From positions 159,177-223,176 of the IMG/VR virus record IMGVR_UViG_3300028392_000029: a DNA stretch of 64,000 bases, one strand, 5' to 3'. The notes under the pieces were generated by a model, which was not told the origin of the DNA, searched no databases, and saw only the letters and a list, made by a program, of their open reading frames with translations. Positions 35,804 to 61,923 of this stretch are shown one piece after another. Both the position numbers and the translations under genes were made by a program. The first letter of the stretch is position 1, and the number at the start of each line of letters is the position of its first letter.

Positions 35804-35806
35804 TGT

Positions 35807-35884
35807 TTAATATCCAAATCTTGTTTTGTAAGTTGCGTACAATGACTGAACGTCGGCTAGCGTTACTGCTACTGCACCTGTCAT
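35807..35884 (-). pseudogene. 25-aa mini-ORF, probably an internally deleted remnant of a LamG-type tail protein gene
   Basis: MTGAVAVTLADVQSLYATYKTRFGY* fills the intergenic gap exactly. Confidence 0.5.
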
Positions 35885-35885
35885 A

Positions 35886-38600: not shown

Positions 38601-38614
38601 TCTATTCTCCTACC

Positions 38615-39085
38615 TTAAAAGGTTCCTAAATCGTATGTACCTATTGGGTTGGCAAATGTGCCTTGATCGCCAATAGTGCCGCTTAATAATGTTTGTACTT
38701 GGGTATTTAATGTTCGTATATCAAAACCCCAAACTGTGGTTTGTATGTCACCCGTGCCCGTTATGTTGTGATTATTTAAATTTAAATTACCACCTAATCT
38801 TGGAACCGGGTCGCTTTGTACAGCACCTAACGCATTGATATTAACTGTGGTCGGGGTACTTGTAACAGTAACTCCGCTACTGCCTGTTATGGTTTTAAAC
38901 TGTAGTACGCCGTTGGTATCTACTGAAAATAACCCAGCTCCTGATCCAATGTTCTGTCCGTTTATACCGGCAATTTGTGCTGATAAAAATACAAAATTAT
39001 CATTAGCTTTGGTAAAAGCCGTGCGTAAATCATCGCCTGTACCGTCATTCGCGTATGAACCTAATTTAATCTGTTGAATTGCCAT
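38615..39085 (-). CDS. Short tail/baseplate protein
   Basis: gp9/gp10-like N-terminus ANDGTGDDLRTAFTKANDNF; DPVPRLGGNL; TAAATA at 39104-39109. Confidence 0.75.
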   Translation of the reverse strand: MAIQQIKLGSYANDGTGDDLRTAFTKANDNFVFLSAQIAGINGQNIGSGAGLFSVDTNGVLQFKTITGSSGVTVTSTPTTVNINALGAVQSDPVPRLGGNLNLNNHNITGTGDIQTTVWGFDIRTLNTQVQTLLSGTIGDQGTFANPIGTYDLGTF

Positions 39086-39115
39086 GGTCTATTCCGTTTA
39101 GTATATTTACCGTAA

Positions 39116-41863
39116 TTAGCTAATGCTTACTCTGTGTATAGTCAGTCTACAGCCGCTGGCAAGATCGATATTTGCTCCGCTAGCATTCCTTAAAACAAAA
39201 CAATGAATGGTGTCCCCGGCGGTGGCTTGAACCACAGTTGAATAGTGTAGATATCGCCCCGACCATGCATCCTGCATGATTGTGACTGTTTTAGCACCGT
39301 CACTGCTGTCTATGAGGAAAAAGCTACCTGAGTTTAATGTCACTGATGTTGAGAAATATATTGACACATTGAATTGATAGTATCCTGTATATGGTGCTGT
39401 GAATACACCATTGGCGTATGCATTAGCAGTGTCCACTGTTTCAGTAAACAGAATGTAGGCGGCACTTGCTTGATCTATGATTGTTCTTGTAGTTGATGTT
39501 TGGGCAATCACTGTGACAGGTTTGTAACTGGCAATAACACTGGCATCTGGTAATGTTATCTGGCCACTACTTCCAAAAATATAATTGTTACCGCCCACTT
39601 GTAGTGTAATGGCATTTGATAAAGTATTTGACAGCGTGTCTCCACTGAACGCAAAATTACCCAAACTTGGTGCGGATCCGTAGGTAACTTCTTTAGTTGT
39701 GGTGTTGTAATATAACACATTGGATGTTGCTGTGGCAGTTCTAATTGGTGCCACATAGAAACTGTTGGGTTGTTCGGCAACACTATTGACTATAACACCG
39801 CTGGCATTTAATATGATGGTGTTGGCCGCTTGGTTGTTGTCTCCCGCCCTATAACCGATTGCTATGGCATTGGCACCTTGGCCGCCTAGGCCGGCTTGCT
39901 TACCAATGGCCACGCTGTTTACACCTTGTAAGTTATACCCAGCACCAAAGCCCACAGCCACTGCACCTTGACCTTGCACGGATATTCCAGCCAAGGCACC
40001 AATGGCCACTGTTTCAGTTCCTTGGTCACTATTACCCGCTTGTGTGCCAATGGCCACTGCATTGGCACCTTGTGAGGTTGTTCCGGCATCTTCACCAAAT
40101 ACCACACTATTACCCGCAGTGTCTTTTATCACTGCACCGTTGGGCAATGTCAATGCACCATCCGTGCCAAATGTAAAATTATGTGGAACTGTGCTTGAGG
40201 TTGAAAAAGATACACTACGGATACCCGTATTGTTAGGCAGTGTGCCGTCTACTCTACCACTCACACGCTGCCAGGTTGGATGTGCTGGATCGTATTGTCC
40301 TTGAGTTGTGAACGCCTGTGTTATGGTGCCAGTAAACAAATTAGGCTGGCCACCGGATGTTTCATACACCACACCCATACCCGTGCCCAGAGCCAGTCCA
40401 GTCACATAGGTCACAAACGCAGGGGTTCCGAACAGGGCAAACTCAATCTGTGACGGATTGCGTTGATACCATCCCTGTATAAATGTGCCGTTTACTGTTA
40501 TGTCTCTTGAGAAGGCTTGCGCATTGTTATAGGTCGGACTGGTGGTAACCACTGTTTCCTGAGTGGTAACTGCAAGCGCAGTGTCTACCGCAGATTTAAT
40601 GGTGTTGCTGGGAAATGTCAATACACCAGTTGAAGCAAGACTCAATGTGCTGCCACCGTTGACCAAACTACTCACACTGCCAGTCCAGGCTGTGGTCTGT
40701 ACAGAAGCGTCTGGGAATGTTAAGCTACCATCTGTGCCAAGACTCCACTGTTTAACACCACCAGAAGTTTGTGTTTCAATTTGCAACACTTTGTTAAGAT
40801 CAGCGGTTATAGTAGAGTAAGGCGTGCCATTTTTCCGAAAGGTGAGTCCTGACGGCAATGTTAAGACGCCACTAGAACTAAGGCTCACAGTTTGTGTGCT
40901 GTTGACTAATGTGCTTACACTGCCAAGCCAGGCTGTGGTTTGTACCGTGGCATTGGGGAATGTTAAATTACCATTCTTGCCAAAGGTCCAGATACTGTTT
41001 GTTGCCCCAGGCTTATAAAAACTCCAAGATGAAACGCCAAAAGTATCGCTAGCACCTGTGAAGTCGTCAGTACTTAAAGTTATACGCCATTCCCCAATAT
41101 TAGCGTCAGGAGCAGCCACAGCAGTTATTTGCATTACACATGTTCTACTAATCACATAGTCACCAACAGCGACTACGGTTGCCCAATTGGGTGCTGAAGA
41201 AATTGAGAACACTAGGGTAAAAAAATCACTGTAAAGAGCACTAAGGTTAGATAGGTAATAAGCGCCAGTTTGTATTTTTATATCCAATGCTGATTTTATT
41301 TTTGACCCAACTCCAGCCATGATATCAAAATTTGGCAATGTTACTGTGCCATCCGAGCCAAGGCTCACTGTGCGAGCACCGTTGACTAATGTGCTTACAC
41401 TGCCACTGCTGGCAGTAACAACGCCACTGCCATCTATACTTAGGCCAGTGCCAATTTTGATACCACCCAATATGGATGCGGATGCTGTGGGCAATGTGTA
41501 AGCACTGGGTATGGTGGGCTTGTTGGTCAAGTCTGTATATGAACCACTGAACAATGTGGGTTTGTTCAGTATAACTCCTAATCCACTAGATGCAGTCCAG
41601 TTGCTTTGTACCTGTGCCGCCGCCCCAGTTAGTAATATTTTGTTATTGGCATCATCATAGGTCACCGTGATGTTGGTGTGACTGGCATGTGTGAACAAGG
41701 GTGCCGCATAGTCCTGTGCCAGTTCAATCAAAGCCGCACTTGAACCGCCAGTTAAGGCATACAGTTCTGTGAAGTTTGCATTTACTTTTATAAACGCATT
41801 ACGAAGTGTATCACCGCTTTTGTCGTTGGCACTAGCACCAACTAGGATATTTTGTTTAGACAT
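39116..41863 (-). CDS. Tail fibre/receptor-binding protein with YadA-like head repeats and a C-terminal C1q-like domain
   Basis: ANDKSGDTLRNAF N-terminus; repeated AVAIG; GVFTAPYTGYYQF. Confidence 0.8.
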   Translation of the reverse strand: MSKQNILVGASANDKSGDTLRNAFIKVNANFTELYALTGGSSAALIELAQDYAAPLFTHASHTNITVTYDDANNKILLTGAAAQVQSNWTASSGLGVILNKPTLFSGSYTDLTNKPTIPSAYTLPTASASILGGIKIGTGLSIDGSGVVTASSGSVSTLVNGARTVSLGSDGTVTLPNFDIMAGVGSKIKSALDIKIQTGAYYLSNLSALYSDFFTLVFSISSAPNWATVVAVGDYVISRTCVMQITAVAAPDANIGEWRITLSTDDFTGASDTFGVSSWSFYKPGATNSIWTFGKNGNLTFPNATVQTTAWLGSVSTLVNSTQTVSLSSSGVLTLPSGLTFRKNGTPYSTITADLNKVLQIETQTSGGVKQWSLGTDGSLTFPDASVQTTAWTGSVSSLVNGGSTLSLASTGVLTFPSNTIKSAVDTALAVTTQETVVTTSPTYNNAQAFSRDITVNGTFIQGWYQRNPSQIEFALFGTPAFVTYVTGLALGTGMGVVYETSGGQPNLFTGTITQAFTTQGQYDPAHPTWQRVSGRVDGTLPNNTGIRSVSFSTSSTVPHNFTFGTDGALTLPNGAVIKDTAGNSVVFGEDAGTTSQGANAVAIGTQAGNSDQGTETVAIGALAGISVQGQGAVAVGFGAGYNLQGVNSVAIGKQAGLGGQGANAIAIGYRAGDNNQAANTIILNASGVIVNSVAEQPNSFYVAPIRTATATSNVLYYNTTTKEVTYGSAPSLGNFAFSGDTLSNTLSNAITLQVGGNNYIFGSSGQITLPDASVIASYKPVTVIAQTSTTRTIIDQASAAYILFTETVDTANAYANGVFTAPYTGYYQFNVSIYFSTSVTLNSGSFFLIDSSDGAKTVTIMQDAWSGRYLHYSTVVQATAGDTIHCFVLRNASGANIDLASGCRLTIHRVSIS
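40901..41405. repeat. 25-bp identical direct repeat, 480 bp apart, inside the tail fibre gene
   Basis: gttgactaatgtgcttacactgcca at 40901-40925 and 41381-41405; a third diverged copy near 40660. Confidence 0.9.
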
Positions 41864-44800
41864 TATGATCTCCCTACTGCAACTTCGATTACGCCCACAC
41901 TATCGTAGTCTTTGTCCTGGATAGCCTTACCAATAATACTGCCAATCTGTGGATTAGTTGACTTGACTGCGCAACCCTCTACAGCTGATGTTGTTAGTAA
42001 ATCACCCTTCTTAACTCGACCAACTACTCGGCACGGAATACGACCTGCTAGTGCTAGACAGACCTTGATGCCCTGTTGTCCTTCGTTCATTACATAAGCC
42101 GGGTTAGTTGTTACTACACCTGCTAATCTAGTGTCGTTAAATGTAGTAGTTGAAGTAACTTCTTTGTCACCACCAAACACTAACACCCAACCTTCTGGAT
42201 ATTCTTGATCACCTTCATAGAACTCAGCCAAGTCAGCATATGTACTGCGTAGTTGACTACCAGTTGTTAAACTCCAGTTACCATCAATAGTACCAGCGGC
42301 TGTACTTGATCCAGCTGTTAAGTTATTTGATTTTAATATACCTAGGCTAAAATCAAACTGGCTACTAGCCGTCAAGTACCACTGACCCTCCATTGATCCA
42401 CCAGTAGCAGGTGCACCAGCAGTAAATGTTGTAGCAACTAATGTTCCGTTGCTGGTATTTAAAGTACCCTGTGTAGTAATAGTAGTGTTACTGCCAGTAG
42501 TACCAACAGCAGTCATGTAGTAGAATGGAGTTGCTTGAACTATACCACCTGGGGTACTATGTTGTACAGTAGTTCCGCTAGTTGATAGTACTGTGAAGCC
42601 TCCAACTTTTAAGTTAGCAACGTCGGCACTTCCATCAACCCCAGTTTTAAGTATTTGATTAGCACCACGAGTTGAAGTAATACCAACTACAGTATATGAA
42701 TTATTTGCACTGTTAGATCCGTCATAGCCTACGACCATAGCACCACTTGCGCCAAACGATCCATTACTAATACCACCGGCAGCATTTAAAATCTGTGTTG
42801 GTGTTACTTCTGACGGACTAGCGGCGCTGGCAGTTAAATTACCAAGCACAGTTCCAACACTCATCTGTTGTATTTTACTATAGGTAATACCGGTTATAGC
42901 ACTAGTACTGGTTAATAAATCAATCCAACCGTTGGTACTGCTAAATGACGAGCTGTTAAAACTAGCTATACCTAAATCAGCTTGCGCAATTCCAGTGTAG
43001 TTAGCTCGAGTCGTAGCCGCAGTCATTGCCAGCTTGCTTTGCGCGATTGCCGCGCTAGCATTAACATCGGCGTTGACAATTGCTCCGGCATTGAGGTTGG
43101 TAACTATAGTGCCGGTGCCCGAGTTGTAGGTGATCGATAAATCACCTGTAGGAGCCGCAACGTTTTTCCACTTACCCAACCCGACATCGTACACTAAGAA
43201 CGATCCCGATGACACAGCATTTAAGAAGAATATAGTTCCACTTGGGTTGCTGTTCGGATATGTTCCTAGAGTAATTGTGGCAACACCTGCGCCGCTGATA
43301 CTCACACTTTGAACGATCTGAGTACCGTCAAATCCAGTACCATACACTGCTAACCCGCTAGTAATACTTCCACTGATGTTGTTAACTGTTAACACATAGC
43401 TAATACTACTGCCGCTTAGATACAGGCCCCTGCCAGCGGCAATGCCCACATCTAGCAATTTGAATATCGAGTTTAATGCAATCAAACTTTGGTCAACATA
43501 ATCTCTGTTAGCCCCGTCATACTTGCTAGTACTGGTACTTGGCATTGTTAAATTACCAATACTAAAGTTACCTAAATTTAAATTACCCTTCATGGCTAGT
43601 GTGCCGTTAAGTGCTAGATATCCTGGGCCGATCAAACTAGTTGTAGCTACTGGACTACCGCCATAGTCTAAACCTAATCTGTTGTCAATGAAACTACGAG
43701 TAGCACTTTGTACCGGAACAATGTCCGGTGCGTTATCAGTCATTGTAGGATCAGTTGAGAATTGAGTAACAACAACACCGCGTTTAAATCCTAAACCGTC
43801 CAAGTTACTAAGGGCAATACTTGCTGAGAATGTAACAGTACCAGTGCCCTGGTCAACGCTGAAGAATCGACCTACACGGAATATACCGTTTTCGTCTGTG
43901 GTCACATAGAACACACGACCTACTGTTTCTTCTTTAACTTGATTACTACCGTTTGACTGTATTGCCGGATTACCGTAAATTTGTACAGGATAGTTAGTAG
44001 TAACATACCCGCCAGTACCGATATCTAAGAAGTCATGTCCCGTAGCTCGGCAAGTACTAATACGTGTGGTAATTTGAGCCGCTGATCCAGCTGGTCTACC
44101 TAGACGCAGGGTAGCACTGGTAAGAGTACTAAATGGTCTTCCAATACCTAGCGTATTGCTAGAGCCACTAGTTACTTCTAAAGTCACAGTAGTATTAAAC
44201 GCTGTACTCCATGTACCCGGATCTTGAGGATATGTTAGTGTAATAGTTGTGGCGCTACTTGCACTGCACAAATAGAATCCGTTGTACAATGGATTGTTGT
44301 TACCCGAAACAAGATAATAGCTTCCTGTAACGGGCGCAGTTGTTGTGGCAAAATTCAATACCACACTGTAAGTCGGGCCAGTACCGATGATAGTCTTACT
44401 TGTAAATCCAGTACTAGCATCAACTGCAAGACTTGTACCATATCCGTAGTTTGGAGAATACAATGACAACAGAGTTCCTACACTAACACTACCAGACGAT
44501 ACGGTTATATCGCTTCCACCTAATGAAGTAGCAATACCGATAGATGTTCCTGCTACTTTGTTAATGTAGTACAATGTATTTGGAGAAACTCCGTTAACTG
44601 GCGTTAAGATGGTCCCAGTTCCAAATGCCGAGCCACTGAATGTAATCTGTTGTCCAGCATTTAATCCGGTAGCCGATGCAACTGTTAATAGATTTGCCAG
44701 CCCTGAAATACTAGTACTGGAAACAGTTTGACTTGCACTAACTGTGTAACTGGTACCGACAATACCAATATTAATTCCGTTAGTAGCCGCACCACTGAGT

Positions 44801-47800
44801 GTGAACGGGCCGGTGCCACTGGCAATATATGTTCCGGTAGGTATACCGGTCCCCACCAACACCATACCAATACTTGGAGCAGTACCTGATACAATAGTTA
44901 ATGTAGTTGTACTTGTAATAGTTCCAACAAACGTTGCACTATTAACAGCAGTAATATAAGTTCCAGTAGTTACTCCAGATCCGGATAATACCATACCGAG
45001 GACAGGAGTGCCAGATGCTACAGTAGTTAAACTTAATGTAGTACCTGTAATCCGTCCAGTAGAACTTAATGTGCTATTAGTAGTTGCAGTAACATTTGAA
45101 TTTGCTCCCGGGTCGGTTGGATACAACAATGACATGGTCACAGTATTTGTACCAGCACTGGCTGTTGTAGCAACGGTAGCTGTTGATGTTAGCACTGGTG
45201 TAAGCAATACGCTACCCAATGCAGGTGTTACTGTAATAATAGGTTGAGAAGTGTATCCGTATCCTGGACTCACTAACACATAGGCTACGATACTACCGTT
45301 GGCAATAGTTACTGTTGCAATGGCTTGACTTGTCGCACCACCGCCTGAGAACACAACGGTTGGAGGATTTGCTGGATCAAATCCACTACCACCATTGGTA
45401 ATTGTAATACTTTGTACGGTAGCTACTAAACTAGAACTTACTATACTGCCCGATGGAATCCAAACAGCAGGAGCCACTGTAAATTTAGTTGTACTATCAA
45501 TACTTTGGATAATAGTTCCACTAGGAACATATGCGCCAGTGCTGGTAGATGATACTACCATGCCTACAGATAAACTAGAAGTAGATGATACTGTTAGTTG
45601 ACTGCTGTTAACAATGCCAGCAATCTGCTTGCTTCCGTTATAACTAGTATTACTGTTATTTGCTATGGTAATATAACTGTCGACCGCAGGTAACTGTGCC
45701 GTCGGACTGTATGGAATATTAAATGTTACAATCTTAGCAGTTGTACTACCTGTTTGCAGTACACTACTAGCATAGGTCATGGAATTGATAACAGTTCCAT
45801 CGGCCGCTAAGTTGCTTATTGGGTTAGGGTCAACACTTAAATATCCGTTGGCTGTAACACCAAATGTAACAGTGCCAGTTGGAGGGTTAACTGTAGCCGC
45901 GCTACTCAAGGTGATTGTTGCTGTATTTACACCACCAGAATTAGATATAACAACAGTTGATACAGTTTGTGTTCCGTTGAATCCTGTACTACTGCCAGTA
46001 CTTGTTAAGATTTGACCTTGACTAATTGTACCTGCAAGACCGTTAACTACTAGTGTATAAGTTGGCCCAGCTGTTACAGTATAGCTTACAAACAACCCTG
46101 TTGAAATAGTCAGTGGCGCAGTATAACTAATAACTCTATGTGTACGACCACCCCAGCCAACTACATAAGTTCCTTTGTTAATTTGATTAATGGTTGATGC
46201 CGAACTAACGGCTAACACAGCAATTTTGTTATCTCCAACCTTACTACCTTGAGTTTTAGTAGCGTCAGTTGGATCCAATTGCGTTATATTATTACCATCG
46301 GTTGTAAATTTATAATAGCTAAAGCTAGCATCAGTTTGTAACACTGATATGTTTGCACCTAAAGTTTCTCCAGTTGCCTCAGTTAACCCATATGCAATTA
46401 CTCGATAAATTTCAGATAAATTGTCAACATACTGTAACGCAGTACTTGGACGTACAGGTTTAACGTTATCAATATTATTGAATTTTATAGCTTGTAATAC
46501 TCTAAAGGTCACAGTTTGACCGTCATATAATGCGTATTGTAGTCCAGTGCTTGAAGTACTGTCAGTGCCTGCGGTACTAAGAGTTACAGATAATATGTTT
46601 TTACCATTGATAGTAACAGTGGTGTGTGCAATTGTTGATATTAGATATCGAACAATGCCGCCACTCTGTACACCGTGATCAATTTCCAGTTCGCTGGCAG
46701 TGTATGGAGCATATGAGTATCCGGTAATGTATAGAGTGACAGACTGTTTAGTTGAAGTTGGAGTCATCTCATTAACAAACAAACCTTGCTTGTATATACG
46801 AGCTACCTGAACCATATCATAGGATAAGTTTACACTATCGGGCAATTCTGTTACGTCGTATCCTGTAGCACGTAAACCATAAACACCGTGTGAGTTAGAA
46901 CCAGCAATACTTCGAACTTGACCGCCATTGTTGGCCCAGTAGCCTGTGTAACAGTAATATGAGAATGTAGATACTTGTTCAGTCAATCCACCGTTGGTTG
47001 CAAATACACCATAACCTAAATCGTTAATTTGTGTAAAGTCGTTAGCCAACATGGACTTATTACCGCCCATTTCAATATTGATACCTAGACCGGCACCACT
47101 GTTTAAGTAGGCAACTGATCCAGATAACAATGTAGATTTCAATCCCTGTAATGTAGTGTAATCACTAGATCTAGTTTGACTTGAATACCATGATTGACTT
47201 GCAGGGGTAGTACGTGTAGTTGGCGTATCAAAATCACCATCTGCAACATAGTCAGTTAGAATTGCAATCTCGGTGTTTACTAATCCTGCTTCAGTTGCGG
47301 TTGCCACAGGCAAACTTATATTTTGAGTATATGGATTACCAGCAGATTTACTTACAGTTTGATTTTGAACAACCTGTTGCATAACAGTATTCAATCGACC
47401 GTATGCCGCAACGCAGTAAGATTCTTCTCCTAAGATTTGACTCACACCGCTGCCGTAATAACTTAGCGATACATCATAGATGGCGCTATTACCACCATAC
47501 ATAATATCGTAACAGATAGCATCAATAATAAATCCTGTATCTCTTTGAGATTTAAGGGCGTTATAATTAGGAATAGTGTTTACGTTATATGTACTAGCAA
47601 TCCAAGCAGACACTTCCTGTTGTAAGAATATTCTGTTAGCTTGTAAAATATTTTTTGCCTTAACAGCATTAGGATTGTTATAAGTACCACCCGGTGTTGG
47701 GAAGGTAGTCGCTGGCACGGTAGTAACACCGTTATTGATCATGTTAGTAATTGTAAGCAAACTTGCCGCAATTGAATTCTTGCCAGTAGTTGATACACTA

Positions 47801-50800
47801 CCTAAATTAGAATTAACATATGCTAGACCTTGAGTTGTAAACAATGTAGCTAAAACAGTTAAACTATTCTGTGGGAACAAATATGTATAACCTGAGAACA
47901 AACTCTTATAGTTAGAACCAGTTACCATGTCTAGACCAATATTGTCTATAACACCACCCAACGCAGTTGTAAATTTAGTTGTGTTGTAAAAATTAGGCGG
48001 ATAGAAAGGTGTACCAGTATCAATTGTTAGCACCACTGTATAGGTTGCCGCATTAAAACTTACAACATCGTTAACTTGGAAGCGATTACCTTGTATATAG
48101 AAAGCGCAAGGAGTTTGTGGAGCACGAATATCAAGTCCGCTGTTAACACTTCCAACAACGGTAATTTGTGTACCATTAACACCTGCAATATTTTGTTCTA
48201 CCCTAGTAATTTTACCAAACAAACGTCCAGTGAATCCATCAATGAATTGACCGCCAGCAAATCGTTTGTAATTGATACTTTGACTAAAGCTACCGCTCTC
48301 TTGAGCATAAGGTGATTTAGTTTTAATTTGTCCTTCTGGATCAAGTACCATGGCAAATCCGCCGTGTCCTTGCATGCTGATCATTCTAACACGAGTAGCA
48401 TCATTACATAAGAACACATCCATTAATCTATTGTTTAGCGGAGTACTATTAATATCTAACGGATCAGTTAAGTAGTGTCTTCCGTAATTAATTGTACTGT
48501 ACAAATGCCAAGCGCCAACAGCATATGTTGTTGCGGCAGCAAAAGGATAAATCACTGTTAAGTTTAACACATTACCACTGATAGTGCTAACAACAGCTTT
48601 ACCCGGAGTTCCGGTACCGCTAGTGCTGTCAGTGAATACTAATCCTAGCCAACTTGCCGGTGCTTGACCAGTACCTAGTGTAGCTGTGATTGATCCTGTT
48701 ATACCGCTGAGTGTAATAGTTGATCCAGTAGTGGCAGCATAATCGGTACCACTATAATCAATAATACCAGTCTGTATGCCGTCAATGACACTGTCTCTAT
48801 AAAAGAACACACTGCGCCATGGGCTTTGACTTACACGATCTAATGGACGTACAATAACACGTCGGAAGTCATCACCAGAAATTGTTACGTTTGCAGATAA
48901 TTTGATTGGGTAATCTTCATAGTAGGTACCGCTTTCAACACAGATAGCAATGTTTTGTTCCGGAACAGTTTCACCGTAGTCTATTTCTTCCCCTACTCTA
49001 AAGAATCCTGGACGAACCATCCTTACTGTGATAGTGTCATATGAAGTAGTTACACCTGGAGTGTATGTTACAATTTGGCCGTATGCATTGCTAGTTCCAC
49101 CGACTAGTATTTTGGCAGGAATAATGTGTACCGCACCTGGTATACCTTGGTCTACAAATCCGTTACCGCCGTTGTCAAATGTAATAGTATACAAGCCCGA
49201 GCCAAATGTAGGGGTTGGAGCCGCACCATATCCATTTGTAATAATACTAATTAAAGTATTCATGTTTGTGGTAAATGTAGTTTTTGCAGGAGTACTTGGC
49301 GACTTTGCAACACCATTCACCGTTGTTTGTTGTCTTACTAGATCTTGGAATCGTGTTTGCTGGGTTTTATTAAGTACCTGAATACCGAGATTTTTAGCAA
49401 ACACAATACCGTCTAATGTTTCACGTAACTGAGATCCAATGGCAATAGCTTTTGCTGATGCATTTTTATAATAGCTTTTACCAGCATTGACGCTTTGATA
49501 AGTTCCGCCTGTTAGTATATCAATAATCATTGCATCAATGATGTATCCAATATCTCGATAACAAGTTGCTTCATTATAATTAAACCCGCCTGGATATGTA
49601 ACAGCGAGGTATGCAGTAGTTGCGTTTCCTATAGTATCTTTACTGTTATTTAAAATTACTTGTGCAGCCTGGGGAATACTTGCATAAATTGTTAAGTCTG
49701 GAAGAGATTGGGTATAGGTTGTATCGTTAGCAACAATATCTGTAACATAATTGAACAATGCATTAATGTCTCCGGCTGCCGCGGCACCGTCAACCCATAC
49801 TGCGTTTCTTACCTGTACAGCACTGTTACCAGTTGCAGGAGTCACTACTGAATTTGACGACACAAGAATAGCAACCGCCTGTGCATGAGTAATTGCTGCC
49901 ACTGTTGCAGTTACTTCATTGCTGGCGATTTGTCTAGTGCCACCGGCCCAATATTGATATGCGGCTCTCAGTGTTGCTGAATTACCACCATATGTTAGAT
50001 CGTAACAGACTGCTTCTAATATAGATTTCACATCTCTACTGCAAGTGGTGTTACTATATACTAAAGATGGGTAATTGGTATTAATCCAAGCAATAGTATC
50101 TGCGGCAATAAAATCAATATTGGCCAATATGGCCGAACGTGCGTGAGCAGTTGTAACTGTTATCGATGGCGGGTCAATAAATGTTGGAACAGACCTACTG
50201 GCAATACCAGCTGTTAATAAGTTAGTAATAATCCCAAACAAACTTGTAATTGTAGAACTGACGGTCACATTATTGATTACTGAGAATGTTGAATTGATAT
50301 AGCTAATCTCAGCTGACTGGATTGCAGATTTCTTCGCAATAATTGCAGTTCTAGCAGTATTCAAAGTAGCACTGGCATTGGCTGTCGTTGGCCCGTACAC
50401 TACTGGATTAGGTGTACTTACACTATTAACGATCCCGGCAATCGTTGCTATGTTGTTTGATATTGATGTGCTGACAATTGTTGAGCCGCCCAATGTTTGA
50501 TTGATATACTGATATACACTCAATTGATACACAGTAGTAGTCGAAACATTATTAATGATCGCTTGACACAATGTATTAATATAATTAATTGCGGCGACGG
50601 TGGCAGTTTTTTCATACTGAGCAATTTGTAAAGTATTGCCTATCCAATATTGAAGTCCAGAGTAAACACTGTTACTGTTACCACCGTACATAAAGTCGTA
50701 GATCAAACTCCATATAATATATTTTACATCTCGCTTACATGTGGCAGAACTGTAGCTTAGTGTTGGATAGTTTGCTAATAAGAAAGCAATAATCTCTGCT

Positions 50801-53667
50801 TGGATAAATGATAGGTTGTTCAGCAACAAATCTCTAGCACTTAGTACACCAGTGTTCGACTGATATGTTTCTATCAAGAATAAAATTACATTTGACTGTA
50901 TAGTTGATAGGCCATTTAAGATAGTTGTTCTTGATGTACCGTTGCTTGCGTAAGTTGTACCAGTGCTGTATATTGGGTTGATAGCAGTAGGCCCTGAAGC
51001 AACACCACCGTTGATAACAGTAATTACAATATTAACTAATGTACTAGCAGCCGCATTAGCAGTTCCGGTTCCTGCGCTTACTGATTGTGTGGTAGTATTG
51101 CCTGTAGTTCTAGTGTATAAATTGCCTTGAATGACTGAAGTCATTACGGCATTTAAGTGCGTATATGCGGCTGTAACTGGAACAAGTTCTGTAGCAATAG
51201 TGTTTACGTTAGTTCCTGTAAAGTATGCATCAGCTGCCGCAATGGTAGCAGTATTACCTCCATAGATCAAGTCAAAGGTTATAGCATCGATAATATATCC
51301 GGTGTCACGTCGACAATTTCCTTCGTTGTATAATGAAATAGTTCCTGGATTCAAGTTAGCATTAATGTATGCAATAGTTTCATCAATTAAAAATTGACGA
51401 TTATTTTGTAATTGTCGGGCGCTGATGTTTACACCAGAAGATGAATTGTTATAAGTCCATGTTACGCTAGGTGCACCGTTAGTACTAACATTGTTAATAA
51501 TAGTTGTGATTACATTCATGCTGGCAGTAATGGCAGCAATGGCAGCGGTATTAGTTGGAATTAATCCAATTACTTCATCTCTAGCTAGATTAATACCAGC
51601 AATGGTTTGAGCCTTTTGGCTTGATGTTACTACAGAACTGTAACTTCTAATGTAGGCAAATGCGGCAGTTATAGAACGATAATTAGTTCCAAAGATCAAA
51701 TCATCTAGTACAGCATTAACAATGATTCCCACGTCTCGACTGCATTTTGCTTGATTAAATGTAAATGTTGAACTAGCATTGGTTGTCGGTAAAGCACCAA
51801 ATACTACGCTAGGCAGACTTCCACCTGAAATAATTTTTTCTATCAATGCAGTATTAGCTTTGATATTGGCAACAGCTGATGGTAAATTTGCAAATGCCGC
51901 ATCTGACACTATGGTATTTGCAAGATCGTTTAGTGTTGCCGCTGCCTGACTTATTCCAGTTGTTTTCACAGACATAATACCAGCATGAGTTGTAACCGCA
52001 AATGGATCGCCCCCGGCTACTAGACTAATTTTAATAGTTGTGCTGTCTACTACACTGTGGATAAAATAAATGGTTCCGATAGTAATATTTCCAAAACCAG
52101 TACCGGAAAATGTAATCGGACTTCCTACCAGCATGCCAACGCTTGAATCTACAGTGATGGTGTTTACAATTGAAGTAGTACCCACAGTAGTAGTATTAAC
52201 AACCGTAGGGGTTGTTTCTAGCCCAGTAGATGCTGTGCTAAATGATAAAGCAACCTGTATACTTCTTAAATTTGAACCAAATATCAAATCATATAACAAT
52301 GCATCAATTACTTGACCTAGATATGTTTGAGTATTAGCGGTACTATACGAGAAATTTAAAACTTGATCTCTAGCATAGTTAACTGCATCGATTATTTGAG
52401 TTAAATTATTTTCAACAATATCTGAGTTATAAGCATTGAATAATATAGATGCTTGAGTTGTGGAATTAAAAGTTGTACCTAATACCGTATCATATCCTAC
52501 AGCATCTACGATATCTGAAATTATACTGCCCCATCTAGCTTTATCAAATGTAAATGTGTTTACATATTTTTTGTTAATGTATGCAATAGTTTCAGCTTGG
52601 ATGAACGATTTGTTTGCTGTTAACAAATCAGCGGCATCAGTATAGCCTATAACTCCGCTATTGCCGCCGCCGAGCGTGACACTTTGAATTGTACTAAAGG
52701 TCTGAGTAGGGCCAACTGTGTAGGCAATTCTTTGACGATATGGGCCAGGTTCTACAGTTGATAGCGCAATAAGATTTTGGGCCTGGAGCGCGGCAGCTCC
52801 AATAGTCTTATAAGCATACGCCCACGAACGACCTTCTCGACCGGGGGGAGTGTTTGTTTGTAAATCGTCACCATTAGTCTTAACATATAGATTTGTCGCG
52901 CTATAGCTAGTATTATTGTCAACATAAAATTTTGTTGCGGCTTGTAGATCATCAGCACCATTAGGTGTACCAAATCCTGCCATTGGTGACGGATGGTCGT
53001 TGAGAGCAAGCGGCCCAGTCATAGTATCGCCGCCACGGTAAACAGTATACTTGCGTTGCATTGCTTCTGTGCTTACATAGTTGCTAGACAATGTTGCGTC
53101 ATAGTCTTTATCACTAGTTTGCGGATTAGCTGGCTCGTCACGGACTCTTAATGCTTTTGAAACTGTGCCGTTATAAGTGGCCACGTAGGTATTATCGGCA
53201 TAATTTTTACTAATTGCCAGCTGTCCTAGAGTGGTAGTAATATTTTGAGAAGCGTACAGAGTATTAAACTGATCAACTAGGGCTTGGCTTGGATCTCCTA
53301 AATTACCAATACTAAATTGATTAGCGTTGATACTGGCACTTAACGATGGTTGCGGGTCGTTGTTTAGTCGAGCACTTAAGGCTGCAATTGTGAGTTTAGT
53401 AGGATCAGAGGTAGTAATACCAATACCTGTTCCAGCTACAATAGTTCTAGCAGATAATGCCCCGCCTGTAGTGTTTGCCATGATAACTTGGTTAGCACTA
53501 TACGTAGATGGTGCATCGGACAAGTTGGTAAATCTGATAGTTCCTCCAGCTCCAAAAATAGCGTATAACTCATTAAAGTTGCTGTTTACTTTTTGGAAAC
53601 TTGTACGGATACTATCGCCAGTTCCGTCATTACCTTGTACGCCAATGTCAATTACTTGTTGTGTCAT
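41863..53667 (-). CDS. Giant (3934 aa) virion structural/tail protein
   Basis: GNDGTGDSIRTSF N-terminus; ATKFYVD; helical CxRD repeats; GHDFLDIGTG; C-terminal YADLAEFY...ALAGRIPC...IEVAVGR. Confidence 0.85.
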   Translation of the reverse strand: MTQQVIDIGVQGNDGTGDSIRTSFQKVNSNFNELYAIFGAGGTIRFTNLSDAPSTYSANQVIMANTTGGALSARTIVAGTGIGITTSDPTKLTIAALSARLNNDPQPSLSASINANQFSIGNLGDPSQALVDQFNTLYASQNITTTLGQLAISKNYADNTYVATYNGTVSKALRVRDEPANPQTSDKDYDATLSSNYVSTEAMQRKYTVYRGGDTMTGPLALNDHPSPMAGFGTPNGADDLQAATKFYVDNNTSYSATNLYVKTNGDDLQTNTPPGREGRSWAYAYKTIGAAALQAQNLIALSTVEPGPYRQRIAYTVGPTQTFSTIQSVTLGGGNSGVIGYTDAADLLTANKSFIQAETIAYINKKYVNTFTFDKARWGSIISDIVDAVGYDTVLGTTFNSTTQASILFNAYNSDIVENNLTQIIDAVNYARDQVLNFSYSTANTQTYLGQVIDALLYDLIFGSNLRSIQVALSFSTASTGLETTPTVVNTTTVGTTSIVNTITVDSSVGMLVGSPITFSGTGFGNITIGTIYFIHSVVDSTTIKISLVAGGDPFAVTTHAGIMSVKTTGISQAAATLNDLANTIVSDAAFANLPSAVANIKANTALIEKIISGGSLPSVVFGALPTTNASSTFTFNQAKCSRDVGIIVNAVLDDLIFGTNYRSITAAFAYIRSYSSVVTSSQKAQTIAGINLARDEVIGLIPTNTAAIAAITASMNVITTIINNVSTNGAPSVTWTYNNSSSGVNISARQLQNNRQFLIDETIAYINANLNPGTISLYNEGNCRRDTGYIIDAITFDLIYGGNTATIAAADAYFTGTNVNTIATELVPVTAAYTHLNAVMTSVIQGNLYTRTTGNTTTQSVSAGTGTANAAASTLVNIVITVINGGVASGPTAINPIYSTGTTYASNGTSRTTILNGLSTIQSNVILFLIETYQSNTGVLSARDLLLNNLSFIQAEIIAFLLANYPTLSYSSATCKRDVKYIIWSLIYDFMYGGNSNSVYSGLQYWIGNTLQIAQYEKTATVAAINYINTLCQAIINNVSTTTVYQLSVYQYINQTLGGSTIVSTSISNNIATIAGIVNSVSTPNPVVYGPTTANASATLNTARTAIIAKKSAIQSAEISYINSTFSVINNVTVSSTITSLFGIITNLLTAGIASRSVPTFIDPPSITVTTAHARSAILANIDFIAADTIAWINTNYPSLVYSNTTCSRDVKSILEAVCYDLTYGGNSATLRAAYQYWAGGTRQIASNEVTATVAAITHAQAVAILVSSNSVVTPATGNSAVQVRNAVWVDGAAAAGDINALFNYVTDIVANDTTYTQSLPDLTIYASIPQAAQVILNNSKDTIGNATTAYLAVTYPGGFNYNEATCYRDIGYIIDAMIIDILTGGTYQSVNAGKSYYKNASAKAIAIGSQLRETLDGIVFAKNLGIQVLNKTQQTRFQDLVRQQTTVNGVAKSPSTPAKTTFTTNMNTLISIITNGYGAAPTPTFGSGLYTITFDNGGNGFVDQGIPGAVHIIPAKILVGGTSNAYGQIVTYTPGVTTSYDTITVRMVRPGFFRVGEEIDYGETVPEQNIAICVESGTYYEDYPIKLSANVTISGDDFRRVIVRPLDRVSQSPWRSVFFYRDSVIDGIQTGIIDYSGTDYAATTGSTITLSGITGSITATLGTGQAPASWLGLVFTDSTSGTGTPGKAVVSTISGNVLNLTVIYPFAAATTYAVGAWHLYSTINYGRHYLTDPLDINSTPLNNRLMDVFLCNDATRVRMISMQGHGGFAMVLDPEGQIKTKSPYAQESGSFSQSINYKRFAGGQFIDGFTGRLFGKITRVEQNIAGVNGTQITVVGSVNSGLDIRAPQTPCAFYIQGNRFQVNDVVSFNAATYTVVLTIDTGTPFYPPNFYNTTKFTTALGGVIDNIGLDMVTGSNYKSLFSGYTYLFPQNSLTVLATLFTTQGLAYVNSNLGSVSTTGKNSIAASLLTITNMINNGVTTVPATTFPTPGGTYNNPNAVKAKNILQANRIFLQQEVSAWIASTYNVNTIPNYNALKSQRDTGFIIDAICYDIMYGGNSAIYDVSLSYYGSGVSQILGEESYCVAAYGRLNTVMQQVVQNQTVSKSAGNPYTQNISLPVATATEAGLVNTEIAILTDYVADGDFDTPTTRTTPASQSWYSSQTRSSDYTTLQGLKSTLLSGSVAYLNSGAGLGINIEMGGNKSMLANDFTQINDLGYGVFATNGGLTEQVSTFSYYCYTGYWANNGGQVRSIAGSNSHGVYGLRATGYDVTELPDSVNLSYDMVQVARIYKQGLFVNEMTPTSTKQSVTLYITGYSYAPYTASELEIDHGVQSGGIVRYLISTIAHTTVTINGKNILSVTLSTAGTDSTSSTGLQYALYDGQTVTFRVLQAIKFNNIDNVKPVRPSTALQYVDNLSEIYRVIAYGLTEATGETLGANISVLQTDASFSYYKFTTDGNNITQLDPTDATKTQGSKVGDNKIAVLAVSSASTINQINKGTYVVGWGGRTHRVISYTAPLTISTGLFVSYTVTAGPTYTLVVNGLAGTISQGQILTSTGSSTGFNGTQTVSTVVISNSGGVNTATITLSSAATVNPPTGTVTFGVTANGYLSVDPNPISNLAADGTVINSMTYASSVLQTGSTTAKIVTFNIPYSPTAQLPAVDSYITIANNSNTSYNGSKQIAGIVNSSQLTVSSTSSLSVGMVVSSTSTGAYVPSGTIIQSIDSTTKFTVAPAVWIPSGSIVSSSLVATVQSITITNGGSGFDPANPPTVVFSGGGATSQAIATVTIANGSIVAYVLVSPGYGYTSQPIITVTPALGSVLLTPVLTSTATVATTASAGTNTVTMSLLYPTDPGANSNVTATTNSTLSSTGRITGTTLSLTTVASGTPVLGMVLSGSGVTTGTYITAVNSATFVGTITSTTTLTIVSGTAPSIGMVLVGTGIPTGTYIASGTGPFTLSGAATNGINIGIVGTSYTVSASQTVSSTSISGLANLLTVASATGLNAGQQITFSGSAFGTGTILTPVNGVSPNTLYYINKVAGTSIGIATSLGGSDITVSSGSVSVGTLLSLYSPNYGYGTSLAVDASTGFTSKTIIGTGPTYSVVLNFATTTAPVTGSYYLVSGNNNPLYNGFYLCSASSATTITLTYPQDPGTWSTAFNTTVTLEVTSGSSNTLGIGRPFSTLTSATLRLGRPAGSAAQITTRISTCRATGHDFLDIGTGGYVTTNYPVQIYGNPAIQSNGSNQVKEETVGRVFYVTTDENGIFRVGRFFSVDQGTGTVTFSASIALSNLDGLGFKRGVVVTQFSTDPTMTDNAPDIVPVQSATRSFIDNRLGLDYGGSPVATTSLIGPGYLALNGTLAMKGNLNLGNFSIGNLTMPSTSTSKYDGANRDYVDQSLIALNSIFKLLDVGIAAGRGLYLSGSSISYVLTVNNISGSITSGLAVYGTGFDGTQIVQSVSISGAGVATITLGTYPNSNPSGTIFFLNAVSSGSFLVYDVGLGKWKNVAAPTGDLSITYNSGTGTIVTNLNAGAIVNADVNASAAIAQSKLAMTAATTRANYTGIAQADLGIASFNSSSFSSTNGWIDLLTSTSAITGITYSKIQQMSVGTVLGNLTASAASPSEVTPTQILNAAGGISNGSFGASGAMVVGYDGSNSANNSYTVVGITSTRGANQILKTGVDGSADVANLKVGGFTVLSTSGTTVQHSTPGGIVQATPFYYMTAVGTTGSNTTITTQGTLNTSNGTLVATTFTAGAPATGGSMEGQWYLTASSQFDFSLGILKSNNLTAGSSTAAGTIDGNWSLTTGSQLRSTYADLAEFYEGDQEYPEGWVLVFGGDKEVTSTTTFNDTRLAGVVTTNPAYVMNEGQQGIKVCLALAGRIPCRVVGRVKKGDLLTTSAVEGCAVKSTNPQIGSIIGKAIQDKDYDSVGVIEVAVGRS

Positions 53668-61039: not shown

Positions 61040-61923
61040 CCTGTAGATCTATTTAAGATTTTGATTTCTATACTTTTGGCTAGTCTATCTGCAACTCTAC
61101 GATTCCAGGTTTCCCCAAAATGCAGACCATCTCGTGCCATATTTTCGGGTAGCATCTCGCCGGCAGATAGATTTGCCCAAATTATATCATCAAATTTGAT
61201 ATTTAATTGTTCTTCCCACATGGTATCATAAGTCCATTGGTATACCGGAATACCGGCCAGTCGCCATAATAGTATAGTCGAGTGATACATCATAAGAGCA
61301 TTATAAGAGTCTGATTTATGCTTGATCATACAGCTATAAAATTCTGTTAGATTTGGACTACCTTTGGGAAAGTTTGCGTAACTTTCATCTAACTGCCAAG
61401 GGCCGAGCATACCATATGCTTCTAAATTTTTATACATCATCCTACAGGTTTGAGGCCATTGTATTACTACAAATTTTGGTCTGATGCTAGATGTGTTTTT
61501 TAAAAATAACAAAGAGTTAAGATAAACTAATTCTGCACTTCCGCCGCCCTTGGCATGATTAATTACAGGTATATTTAATTTGTCGCTAAGGATATTCGCC
61601 CACATTTCGTCTTCAGCTAATCCTTCGCCCTCCGTGAAACTGCAACCAAACACCATAAAGAAATTGTTATCAGTAACATCGGATAGGTCTTTGCTACGGT
61701 ATCCTAATGAGTTTTTTGCATATGAAATTTGCTTAGTAGCATATCGCCATGATGGTCCCATAATCTTTAGATTTTTAAAATAAAGTTTTTCAGTATCAGT
61801 ACCATTAGGACTAAAAGTAGTTGGGGCGGTGCGGTCTGAGAAATTAACAGCAATGCTATTGTATGAGTCAACTCTATCAATAATTCGTCCCAAGTTATGT
61901 TTATTAACAGTAAGATTATTCAT
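61036..61923 (-). CDS. SGNH/GDSL-hydrolase-like protein
   Basis: NSLGYRS, FGCSFTEG, NHAKGGGS, RDGLHFG. Confidence 0.65.
   Translation of the reverse strand: MNNLTVNKHNLGRIIDRVDSYNSIAVNFSDRTAPTTFSPNGTDTEKLYFKNLKIMGPSWRYATKQISYAKNSLGYRSKDLSDVTDNNFFMVFGCSFTEGEGLAEDEMWANILSDKLNIPVINHAKGGGSAELVYLNSLLFLKNTSSIRPKFVVIQWPQTCRMMYKNLEAYGMLGPWQLDESYANFPKGSPNLTEFYSCMIKHKSDSYNALMMYHSTILLWRLAGIPVYQWTYDTMWEEQLNIKFDDIIWANLSAGEMLPENMARDGLHFGETWNRRVADRLAKSIEIKILNRSTG

What the first reader, a model, noticed from the sequence alone, without database searches (positions are those of the whole stretch)
47480..52545. Phycobiliprotein-like CxRD helical repeats in the giant virion protein
Seen: KCSRDVGIIVNAVLDDLIFGTN (Cys 51742-44), NCRRDTGYIIDAITFDLIYGGN (51313-15), TCKRDVKYIIWSLIYDFMYGGN (50737-39), TCSRDVKSILEAVCYDLTYGGN (50041-43), TCYRDIGYIIDAMIIDILTGGT (49561-63), a Ser variant KSQRDTGFIIDAICYDIMYGGN, and about three degenerate copies. 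Known: the phycocyanin alpha bilin site reads approximately KCARDIGYYLRMVTYCLxxGGT, where Cys attaches the bilin and Arg/Asp hold it, with the same spacing to the GG. Inference: tandem globin/phycobilin-fold domains that may bind tetrapyrroles (a pigmented, light-sensing or photoprotective virion), or a structural reuse of the fold, in a phage whose other genes suggest a non-cyanobacterial host.
Basis: partly seen in the sequence, partly recalled or inferred. Interest (0 to 1): 0.75.

Follow-up and report, generated by a model that had tools for sequence, protein, structure and literature searches.

The report
Phycobiliprotein-like repeats in phage tail fibre
A giant phage tail-fibre-like protein carries nine tandem domains that fold like the pigment-binding proteins of cyanobacterial antennae and keep their pigment-attachment motif, and complete relatives of the phage encode the enzymes that make such pigments, so the virus particle may itself be pigmented and perhaps light-sensitive.

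Summary
A 3,934-aa ORF (window 41863-53667, minus strand) has five C-x-R-D...GG(N/T) motifs and one Ser variant at exactly the stated codons. Shuffles give 0.002 such motifs.

The motifs mark a repeat of about 168 aa: five complete and three or four degenerate copies here, and 6-39 copies in each of over 560 giant metagenomic homologues.

The fold claim holds:
- The repeat profile finds phycocyanin alpha chains in the PDB.
- hhalign gives 91-93% probability and aligns the Cys with Cys84.
- A template-free AlphaFold model (pLDDT 95.5) has phycobiliproteins as all 50 best Foldseek hits and as the top eight independent structural hits (Z 12-15).

Bilin binding is untested but has new circumstantial support:
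- All five complete viral genomes carrying the repeat have an adjacent heme oxygenase and bilin reductase pair, and none has psbA.
- This record is only 60% complete. By synteny, the part corresponding to the cassette region is missing.

Counter-examples to strict linkage exist (Mosig, S-H9-1).

Among cultured phages the repeat occurs only in T4-like cyanophages. In four or five phages its presence tracks published light-dependent adsorption.

The searched literature does not describe it.

The parts
41863..53667 (-). Giant ORF, 3,934 aa: a baseplate-anchored, tail-fibre-like virion protein that carries the repeat array
   Evidence: ORF list and translation. It matches PHROG tail fiber families phrog_5342 (E 1.9e-62) and phrog_4527 (E 3.1e-51). 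More than 560 giant homologues of 3,000-6,800 aa exist.
53389..53658 (-). N-terminal T4 gp9/gp10-like domain (aa 4-93), the likely baseplate attachment module
   Evidence: Pfam PF07880 T4_gp9_10_N, E 2.8e-7, 31.2 bits, above the cut-off of 25.
52321..52662 (-). Degenerate unit (aa 336-449). The motif position reads A-R-W-G, so there is no Cys/Arg/Asp triad.
   Evidence: Unit HMM match, E 1.8e-15; alignment of the protein's own copies.
51949..52368 (-). Degenerate partial unit (aa 434-573). It keeps the helix-E-like stretch that ends in GSN but has no CxRD.
   Evidence: Unit HMM match, E 1.2e-6, covering model positions 36-102 only.
51445..51801 (-). Truncated unit with C-S-R-D (aa 623-741; Cys642 at 51742-51744)
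   Evidence: E 6e-17, model positions 31-105.
50932..51456 (-). Full unit 2 (aa 738-912), C-R-R-D, Cys785 at 51313-51315
   Evidence: Unit HMM match, E 2e-49. It is confidently helical in the three-unit AlphaFold model.
50359..50871 (-). Full unit 3 (aa 933-1103), C-K-R-D, Cys977 at 50737-50739
   Evidence: Unit HMM match, E 3e-52; three-unit model.
49663..50175 (-). Full unit 4 (aa 1165-1335), C-S-R-D, Cys1209 at 50041-50043. This is the unit that was modelled.
   Evidence: AlphaFold2 gives pLDDT 95.5 and pTM 0.90, all helical. All 50 best Foldseek PDB hits are phycobiliproteins. VIA-align gives Z 12-14.8 to allophycocyanin, phycoerythrin and the ApcE bilin domain.
49177..49692 (-). Full unit 5 (aa 1326-1497), C-Y-R-D...GGT, Cys1369 at 49561-49563. 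In sequence it is the copy closest to phycocyanin alpha.
   Evidence: Sub-threshold Pfam PF00502 hit on aa 1333-1389 (E 0.024, 15.1 bits against a cut-off of 22.2; profile positions 33-96). Unit HMM match, E 1e-38.
47689..48018 (-). Degenerate unit (aa 1884-1993) without CxRD
   Evidence: Found by the first unit HMM, E 1.2e-5. It was not recovered by the broader second HMM.
47176..47691 (-). Full unit 7 (aa 1993-2164), with Ser in place of Cys (S-Q-R-D, Ser2040 at 47548-47550)
   Evidence: Unit HMM match, E 7e-52; motif listing.
41881..42264 (-). C-terminal conserved module (aa 3802-3929) of unknown function
   Evidence: phrog_22593, E 2e-11. There is no Pfam or PDB sequence match.

Best explanation
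The region encodes an array of about nine helical domains of roughly 168 aa, set inside a giant baseplate-anchored, tail-fibre-like virion protein.

Shown:
- Each domain is a phycobiliprotein-type globin with helices A, B, E, F', F, G and H. It lacks the N-terminal X-Y hairpin that light-harvesting subunits use to pair.
- The domain keeps the Cys-x-Arg-Asp triad at the start of helix E. In phycobiliproteins and BBAG globins this triad carries the bilin.
- The domain belongs to a very large phage-only family.

Inferred:
- The Cys-bearing copies bind a linear tetrapyrrole covalently. Attachment is probably self-catalysed, as in BBAGs and ApcE.
- The pigment comes from a phage heme oxygenase plus ferredoxin-dependent bilin reductase, or from the host in cyanophages.
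- The fibre or baseplate of the finished particle would then carry tens to hundreds of bilins.
- Copies without Cys would be apo spacers.

The most likely use is light-dependent control of adsorption. Photoprotection or a purely optical or structural role is also possible.
For: Fold and homology:
- PF00502 is the only Pfam family hit by more than one of 149 diverse units (11 units, best E 2.5e-5). It is also pre-annotated on many homologues.
- The unit profile against all PDB sequences returns 30 phycocyanin alpha chains among 32 hits (best E 8.4e-4), aligning the Cys with Cys84.
- hhalign gives 93% probability against CpcA and 91% over 95 columns against alpha+beta+APC.
- The template-free AlphaFold model has pLDDT 95.5.
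- All 50 best Foldseek PDB hits are phycobiliproteins over about 155 columns.
- VIA-align, which does not depend on Foldseek, ranks eight phycobiliproteins first (Z 12.2-14.8). These include the self-attaching ApcE domain. Other globins follow at Z 8-11.

Site conservation:
- In 835 full units, Cys is kept in 92%, Arg in 94% and Asp in 97%.
- Cys makes up 0.64% of residues, and 56% of all Cys in 120 homologues sit in CxRD.
- CXRD is the recognised bilin site, and BBAGs attach bilin without a lyase (PMC10151467).

Pigment supply:
- All four complete viral genomes found through the repeat (G003, G005, G006, G028) carry adjacent HO and FDBR genes. So does one complete genome found through the FDBR alone (G013, 11 units). 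None has psbA.
- This FDBR type occurs in only 23 of 50,697 cultured phage records.
- G000 is syntenic with G003, but it lacks the whole G003 250-360 kb segment that holds the cassette.
- The flanking DnaK marker is present only in the three fragments or genomes of this lineage that also have the FDBR.

Phenotype lead:
- S-PM2, P-HM1 and P-HM2 show light-dependent adsorption and have units. P-SSM2 and P-SSP7 adsorb in the dark and have none (PMC6628666).
Against: - No bilin has been shown on any of these proteins.
- This record has no HO, FDBR, CpeS or CpeT gene. The argument that the cassette lies in the missing 40% is an inference from synteny.
- Linkage is not strict. Pelagibacter phage Mosig has HO+FDBR but no unit, and P-SSM2 also has no unit. 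Synechococcus phage S-H9-1 has units but no HO or FDBR, although its host makes bilins.
- Only 3 of about 29 incomplete unit-bearing records contain the cassette.
- No lyase was found in the complete genomes, and most phycobiliproteins need one.
- The phycobiliprotein-invariant Arg93 and Tyr97 are not kept. The phage family has invariants of its own whose role is unknown: an Asp 14 residues after the Cys (100%), Tyr (97%) and Gln (86%).
- Sequence statistics are modest. The protein's own units stay below Pfam's cut-off, and TM-scores are 0.5-0.6.
- The genomes sampled are related to one another, so the co-occurrence is not a set of independent events.
Confidence: 0.55

Rival explanations
1. 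Structural reuse. The globin-fold domains are pigment-free beads that lengthen or stiffen the fibre. The Cys-Arg-Asp residues are kept for folding reasons, such as a helix-capping salt bridge. The HO/FDBR cassette serves something else in the infected cell, such as iron release or a host bilin protein.
For: - Several copies in this protein and in its relatives lack the triad yet are retained.
- The three-unit model looks like independent beads with undefined mutual orientation (pTM 0.39).
- Mosig carries the bilin genes without any unit, and P-SSM2 also has no unit. S-H9-1 has units without bilin genes.
- The searched literature has no report of coloured phage particles.
Against: - Cys is retained in 92% of units that are only 20-30% identical overall, in proteins where Cys is otherwise rare. 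Purely structural Cys residues are usually replaceable.
- All three bilin-contact residues are kept together.
- The cassette is present in 5 of 5 complete unit-bearing genomes without psbA, against a base rate of 23 in 50,697 cultured phage records.
- By my own estimate, a few hundred bilins per particle would give an absorbance of only about 0.03 at 1e12 particles per ml. A lack of colour reports is therefore weak evidence.
Confidence: 0.3
2. The conserved Cys and its partners do another chemistry: heme or metal binding, an intramolecular cross-link (for example with the conserved Gln), or covalent capture of a host surface molecule.
For: The family has invariants that phycobiliproteins lack: Asp at Cys+14 (100%), Asp/Glu at Cys+9, Tyr (97%) and Gln (86%). 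The globin fold also carries heme and B12-linked functions in relatives such as globin-coupled sensors and photocobilins, which are structural hits at Z 11.
Against: - No His is conserved in 50% or more of units, so classical heme ligation is unlikely.
- The closest structures and sequences are bilin-binding globins, not heme globins.
- The co-occurring enzymes make bilins.
Confidence: 0.1
3. The resemblance to phycobiliproteins is convergent or a chance motif on an unrelated helical bundle.
For: Individual sequence statistics are borderline: the protein's own unit scores 15 bits against a 22-bit cut-off, and Foldseek E-values are about 2e-3. Helical folds can give high Z scores by chance (note).
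Against: - Unbiased searches of Pfam, PDB sequences, PDB structures (two methods) and AFDB clusters all rank phycobiliproteins first.
- The match covers the whole domain (122-145 residues at 2.1-2.9 A).
- The motif sits at the equivalent helix position with identical spacing to the GG turn.
Confidence: 0.05

Closest known systems
Light-harvesting phycobiliproteins (Pfam PF00502; phycocyanin, phycoerythrin, allophycocyanin, ApcE bilin domain)
   Same: They share the globin-type helical fold over the whole domain (Z 12-15, rmsd 2.1-2.9 A). The CxRD triad starts helix E with the same spacing to the GG(T/N) turn. Tyr74-like and Tyr110-like positions are kept in the hhalign alignment.
   Different: - The phage unit has no X-Y N-terminal hairpin, and the alpha-beta interface residues Asp13, Arg93 and Tyr97 are not kept.
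- The B-E loop is shorter.
- The units occur as 6-39 tandem copies inside 3,000-6,800-aa phage structural proteins rather than as free 160-aa subunits.
- No lyase genes were found.
- Bilin binding has not been shown.
BBAGs, the bilin biosynthesis-associated globins of non-photosynthetic bacteria (Rockwell et al. 2023, PMC10151467)
   Same: They are phycobiliprotein paralogues outside photosynthesis. Some carry CXRD, they sit in genomes that also encode HO and an FDBR, and they attach bilin without a lyase. This is the closest functional analogy.
   Different: BBAGs are single-domain cellular proteins encoded next to the FDBR. The phage units are tandem modules of virion proteins encoded 56-106 kb from the cassette. 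No BBAG sequence was compared directly here.
Phage hemO-pcyX / hemO-pcyA cassettes of uncultured marine and freshwater myoviruses and pelagiphage Mosig (PMC11480375)
   Same: The same two-gene cassette is present in the complete relatives of this phage. The nearest cultured FDBR is that of Mosig (33% identity).
   Different: The published work treats the purpose of the cassette in phages of non-photosynthetic hosts as enigmatic and names no phage-encoded acceptor protein. Here a candidate acceptor is identified. Mosig itself has no unit.
Giant gp7 and tail-fibre-like proteins of T4-like cyanophages (P-HM1 gp7, S-PM2 3,340- and 3,792-aa ORFs, S-H9-1 tail fiber-like protein)
   Same: They carry the same repeat unit with CxRD, 2-9 copies per protein. 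BFVD models of these proteins match the unit with TM up to 0.88.
   Different: This phage is not a classical cyanophage. It has no psbA, and its DNA polymerase is nearest to those of Rhizobiales and enterobacterial jumbo phages. It carries more copies, spread over three giant proteins.

Membership tests
Phycobiliprotein / bilin-binding globin superfamily | Globin-type all-helical fold (helices A, B, E, F', F, G, H) | tested here: met
   The AlphaFold model has pLDDT 95.5. All 50 best Foldseek PDB hits are phycobiliproteins. VIA-align gives Z 12.2-14.8 for its top eight hits, all phycobiliproteins. The top AFDB cluster hit is phycocyanin alpha.
Phycobiliprotein / bilin-binding globin superfamily | CXRD motif at the start of helix E, with Cys as the attachment residue | tested here: met
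   Five of the protein's own units have CxRD and one has SxRD. The family keeps Cys in 92%, Arg in 94% and Asp in 97% of units. The Cys aligns to Cys84. The motif's role is described in PMC10151467.
Phycobiliprotein / bilin-binding globin superfamily | Sequence score above Pfam PF00502's gathering cut-off | tested here: inconclusive
   The best of the protein's own units scores 15.1 bits against a cut-off of 22.2. Of 149 diverse units, 11 hit at E<0.01, the best at 2.5e-5. Many homologues carry a precomputed PF00502 hit. hhalign gives 91-93% probability.
Phycobiliprotein / bilin-binding globin superfamily | Covalently bound bilin chromophore | not testable with these tools
   This needs expression with HO and an FDBR, or analysis of virions.
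Canonical light-harvesting phycobiliprotein (alpha/beta subunit) | N-terminal X-Y hairpin and the Asp13 / Arg93 / Tyr97 alpha-beta interface | tested here: not met
   Structural matches start at chain residue 27-48. Arg93 and Tyr97 are invariant in A3. In the units, the position equivalent to Arg93 is Asp/Glu (93%) and the Tyr97 position is not conserved.
Canonical light-harvesting phycobiliprotein (alpha/beta subunit) | Dedicated lyases (E/F, S/U or T type) encoded in the same genome | tested here: not met
   CpeS and CpeT families are absent from G000 and from the five complete relatives. E/F-type HEAT lyases were not searched.
BBAG-like (bilin biosynthesis-associated globin) | Encoded in a genome or cluster together with heme oxygenase and an FDBR | tested here: inconclusive
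   This is met in 5 of 5 complete related genomes. It is not seen in this 60%-complete record. By synteny the cassette region falls in the missing part. The genes are not adjacent to the units.
Heme globins | Conserved proximal His | tested here: not met
   No His appears among the columns conserved in 50% or more of 835 units.
T4 gp9/gp10-type baseplate-attached fibre protein | N-terminal gp9/gp10 domain | tested here: met
   PF07880 scores 31.2 bits, above its cut-off of 25. A gp9/10-connector-like 156-aa ORF lies nearby at 38615-39085.
T4 gp9/gp10-type baseplate-attached fibre protein | Presence in the virion, and trimeric fibre assembly | not testable with these tools
   The only evidence is annotation by homology: PHROG tail fiber families and cyanophage homologues annotated as tail or structural proteins.

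The most novel reading that the evidence does not exclude
The repeat units are chromophorylated in the particle and work as a virion-borne light sensor, or light-driven switch, in the baseplate and tail fibres, so that adsorption to the host is gated by light. This would explain two things. One is the long-known light-dependent adsorption of cyanomyoviruses such as S-PM2 and P-HM1/P-HM2. The other is why myoviruses of non-photosynthetic hosts carry heme oxygenase and bilin reductase genes: to pigment their own particles.
Probability: 0.25. Interest if true: 0.95.

Novelty: new variant of a known kind. Interest (0 to 1): 0.85.

Why it matters
Phycobiliprotein-type globins are known as photosynthetic antenna subunits and, since 2023, as small bacterial bilin-binding proteins. 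Finding thousands of copies of this fold, with the attachment triad intact, inside giant tail and baseplate proteins of phages puts the family in a new setting.

It also makes two open questions directly testable:
- The purpose of hemO-pcyA/pcyX cassettes in phages of non-photosynthetic hosts is called 'still enigmatic' in PMC11480375. These repeats offer a phage-encoded acceptor for the pigment.
- Some cyanomyoviruses adsorb only in the light, independently of host photosynthesis. [quoted passage not shown] These repeats are a candidate, and their presence matches the phenotype in the four or five phages that could be checked.

A pigmented, light-responsive virus particle would be new to virology. 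It could also supply self-attaching bilin tags.

Tried and rejected
- Pfam on the whole 3,934-aa protein returned nothing. Only pieces gave hits.
- A single-sequence PDB search of the repeat region found nothing. The profile was needed.
- blastn of the region against cultured phages found no match.
- The ESM Atlas feature search of one unit gave only low-score, unrelated leads and no structure search.
- A search for stand-alone single-unit proteins (94-300 aa) with the profile found only five short-contig fragments, so no cellular 'missing link' turned up.
The scan with P0030 found nothing.
- The DNA-polymerase scan returned only very close relatives (77-100% identity), so it could not serve as a phylogenetic control.
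- PDB sequence searches of the C-terminal and central non-repeat regions were uninformative.
- Model coordinates are not exposed. The bilin pocket, the Cys exposure and the Cys-Gln distance therefore could not be examined, and the cross-link idea stays untested.
- The heme-binding reading was rejected because no His is conserved.
- The chance-motif reading was rejected on the shuffle test and on the unanimous fold ranking.
Full report
**1. The observation**

The finding lies inside one ORF, window 41863-53667 on the minus strand, 3,934 aa. The extended motif occurs six times, against 0.002 expected from 20,000 shuffles. CxRD alone occurs five times, against 0.016 expected.

The motifs are the most conserved part of a longer repeat of about 168 aa. 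A profile built from the protein's own copies finds five complete units and three or four degenerate or truncated ones.

**2. The protein and the phage**

- The N-terminus (aa 4-93) matches the T4 gp9/gp10 N-terminal domain above Pfam's cut-off.
- PHROGs files the protein with tail fiber families.
- Its neighbours are other very large structural ORFs and a gp9/10-connector-like ORF. Elsewhere the window holds a T4-type DNA polymerase, clamp loader and a Lon-like protease.
- The record is an IMG/VR contig of 223,176 bp, estimated 60% complete, and the window is its last 64 kb.
- The DNA polymerase is closest to Sinorhizobium phage Phosso (49%), Agrobacterium phage Atu_ph07 (45%) and Rak2-like enterobacterial jumbo phages (44%).
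- No psbA is present.

**3. The family**

A word-indexed search found 562 proteins at E<=1e-5 among 1,823 scored candidates. They are 3,000-6,800 aa long, and many carry a precomputed PF00502 (Phycobilisome protein) hit.

In the 120 best proteins the unit occurs 2,255 times, 6-39 copies per protein. In 835 full-length units the conserved positions are:

| Position | Conservation |
|---|---|
| Cys | 92% |
| Arg | 94% |
| Asp | 97% |
| Asp 14 residues after the Cys | 100% |
| Tyr | 97% |
| Gln | 86% |

Overall identity between units is only 20-30%. Cys is rare in these proteins (0.64% of residues), and 56% of all Cys sit in CxRD. Stand-alone single units were essentially not found.

**4. Is it a phycobiliprotein fold?**

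Five lines of evidence agree.

- **Pfam.** Each of 149 diverse units was scanned separately. PF00502 is the only family hit more than once: 11 units, best E 2.5e-5. The protein's own best unit is sub-threshold at 15.1 bits against a cut-off of 22.2.
- **PDB sequences.** The unit profile against all PDB sequences gives 32 hits, 30 of them phycocyanin alpha chains (best 1f99_A, E 8.4e-4). Profile positions 5-63 align to chain residues 35-104, and the Cys aligns to Cys84.
- **Profile-profile comparison.** I fetched phycocyanin genes from about 120 cyanobacterial contigs. hhalign of the unit alignment gives 93% probability against CpcA over 55 columns, and 91% over 95 columns against a mixed alpha/beta/allophycocyanin alignment. 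That second alignment extends through helices F and G.
- **Predicted structure.** A template-free AlphaFold2 model of unit 4 has pLDDT 95.5 and pTM 0.90 and is all helical. Against 350,542 PDB chains, all 50 best Foldseek matches are phycobiliproteins over about 155 columns, with TM 0.5-0.6.
- **Foldseek-independent alignment.** VIA-align against 48,161 representative chains ranks eight phycobiliproteins first. These are far-red allophycocyanin (Z 14.8), phycoerythrin (14.2), the ApcE bilin domain (13.6) and five more, with 115-145 residues aligned at 2.1-3.3 A. Heme and sensor globins and photocobilins follow at Z 8-11. AFDB clusters also put phycocyanin alpha first.

The matches begin near chain residue 27-48, so the unit lacks the X-Y hairpin. 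The alpha-beta interface residues Arg93 and Tyr97, invariant in my phycobiliprotein alignment, are not kept. The unit is therefore a phycobiliprotein-type globin but not a canonical antenna subunit.

A three-unit model gives confident domains with undefined mutual orientation (pLDDT 82, pTM 0.39). That suggests beads on a string.

**5. Does anything point to a pigment?**

This record has no heme oxygenase, FDBR, CpeS or CpeT gene. The relatives tell a different story.

- I fetched viral contigs encoding relatives of the repeat region. Five of the 12 held records have heme oxygenase and, next to it, an FDBR, including all three that are at least 90% complete. None has psbA.
- A further complete genome found through a distant unit-bearing homologue (G028, 400 kb) also has the pair.
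- In the reverse direction, the only complete genome among contigs found through the FDBR alone (G013, 221 kb) has 11 units in a 3,674-aa ORF.
- All five complete genomes lack psbA, CpeS and CpeT.
- In cultured phages this FDBR type occurs in only 23 of 50,697 records: 22 cyanophages and Pelagibacter phage Mosig.

Only about 3 of 29 incomplete unit-bearing records contain the cassette. However, in complete genomes the cassette lies 56-106 kb from the unit genes. The DnaK that flanks it in G003 is present in exactly the three records of this lineage that have the FDBR, and in no other. The fragments are therefore uninformative rather than negative.

G000 is syntenic with the complete 372-kb G003 at 40-90% protein identity. 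It covers roughly G003 44-249 kb, and the G003 250-360 kb segment with the cassette has no counterpart. The cassette may well lie in the missing 40% of this genome, but that is an inference.

**6. Limits of the linkage**

- Mosig has ferrochelatase, HO and FDBR beside its neck genes but no unit.
- S-H9-1 has eight unit matches but no HO or FDBR, although its Synechococcus host makes bilins.
- P-HM1 has both units and bilin genes.
- The genomes compared are related to one another, so the co-occurrence is not a count of independent events.

**7. Cultured phages and light**

By tblastn the repeat is found in 154 cultured phage records. All are Synechococcus or Prochlorococcus T4-like phages, apart from one marine single-cell virus. 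The hits fall in proteins annotated gp7 baseplate wedge, tail fiber-like, short tail fiber or structural protein. BFVD models of these proteins match the unit with TM up to 0.88.

PMC6628666 reports that P-HM1 and P-HM2 do not adsorb in the dark, that P-SSM2 and P-SSP7 do, and that S-PM2 adsorption is light-dependent and independent of host photosynthesis. [quoted passage not shown]

| Phage | Adsorption (PMC6628666) | Units |
|---|---|---|
| S-PM2 | light-dependent | nine, in two giant ORFs |
| P-HM1 | none in the dark | yes |
| P-HM2 | none in the dark | yes |
| P-SSM2 | adsorbs in the dark | none |
| P-SSP7 | adsorbs in the dark | none |

This is a small sample confounded by phylogeny, but it is a concrete lead.

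**8. Literature**

- CXRD is the recognised bilin attachment motif of phycobiliproteins and of BBAG-1 and BBAG-3, which self-attach bilins without lyases (PMC10151467).
- The purpose of hemO-pcyA/pcyX in phages of non-photosynthetic hosts is described as enigmatic, with a BBAG-like acceptor mentioned only as a possibility (PMC11480375).
- Searches for a phycobiliprotein-like or globin domain in phage virion or tail proteins found nothing.

**9. Verdict**

Bilin binding is the best-supported mechanism but is unproven (about 0.55). A pigment-free structural role is the main rival (about 0.3). A light-gating function is the most novel reading not excluded (about 0.25).

By my own estimate, a few hundred bilins per particle would give an absorbance of only about 0.03 at 1e12 particles per ml. 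The lack of reports of coloured phage stocks therefore does not weigh heavily against the pigment reading.

Noticed in passing
G000:C1:65932-78057 and G000:C1:44982-51656 (outside the window): Two more giant ORFs of the same phage, 4,042 aa and 2,225 aa, carry the same units: 7 and 3 profile matches, with 3 and 2 CxRD. The phage therefore has about 20 units on three proteins.
   Followed up: partly
L162 (G003:C1:278000-293000) and G034: In the complete relative G003, the HO-FDBR pair sits in a block with a RimK-type ATP-grasp ligase, an HSP20 and a full-length phage DnaK/HSP70. The DnaK is 82% identical in G034, which also has the FDBR. Chaperones next to a pigment cassette could matter for folding the giant proteins.
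   Followed up: partly
L270 (Pelagibacter phage Mosig, MT647606.1 35653-44330): A cultured SAR11 myovirus has ferrochelatase, four 2OG-Fe(II) oxygenases, heme oxygenase and an FDBR directly upstream of its neck and tail-sheath-stabiliser genes. It has no unit, so it is a counter-example to strict cassette-unit linkage.
   Followed up: yes
window 31610-41863: Immediately downstream of the giant gene lies a run of large ORFs (1,397, 904, 156 and 915 aa). Two of them have no PHROG match at all. The 156-aa ORF resembles a baseplate wedge/tail fibre connector.
   Followed up: no
window 19490-21763 and 61916-63277: There is a 757-aa Lon-like ATP-dependent protease (phrog_4871, E 6e-248) and a 453-aa radical SAM protein. 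Both are unusual accessory genes for a phage.
   Followed up: no
window 50176-50358 (aa 1104-1164): In the three-unit model, three extra helices lie between units 3 and 4 (model residues 363-416). They look like the front half of a further, truncated unit.
   Followed up: no
window 41881-42264 (aa 3802-3929): The C-terminal module matches only phrog_22593, of unknown function. From memory, its sequence recalls the self-cleaving chaperone ends of trimeric fibres, but no Pfam or PDB match supports this.
   Followed up: partly
More than 551 viral contigs encode a relative of this FDBR. More than 599 encode a DNA polymerase related to this phage's, and the best 80 listed are 77-100% identical. The lineage and the cassette are therefore abundant in metagenomes.
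   Followed up: no
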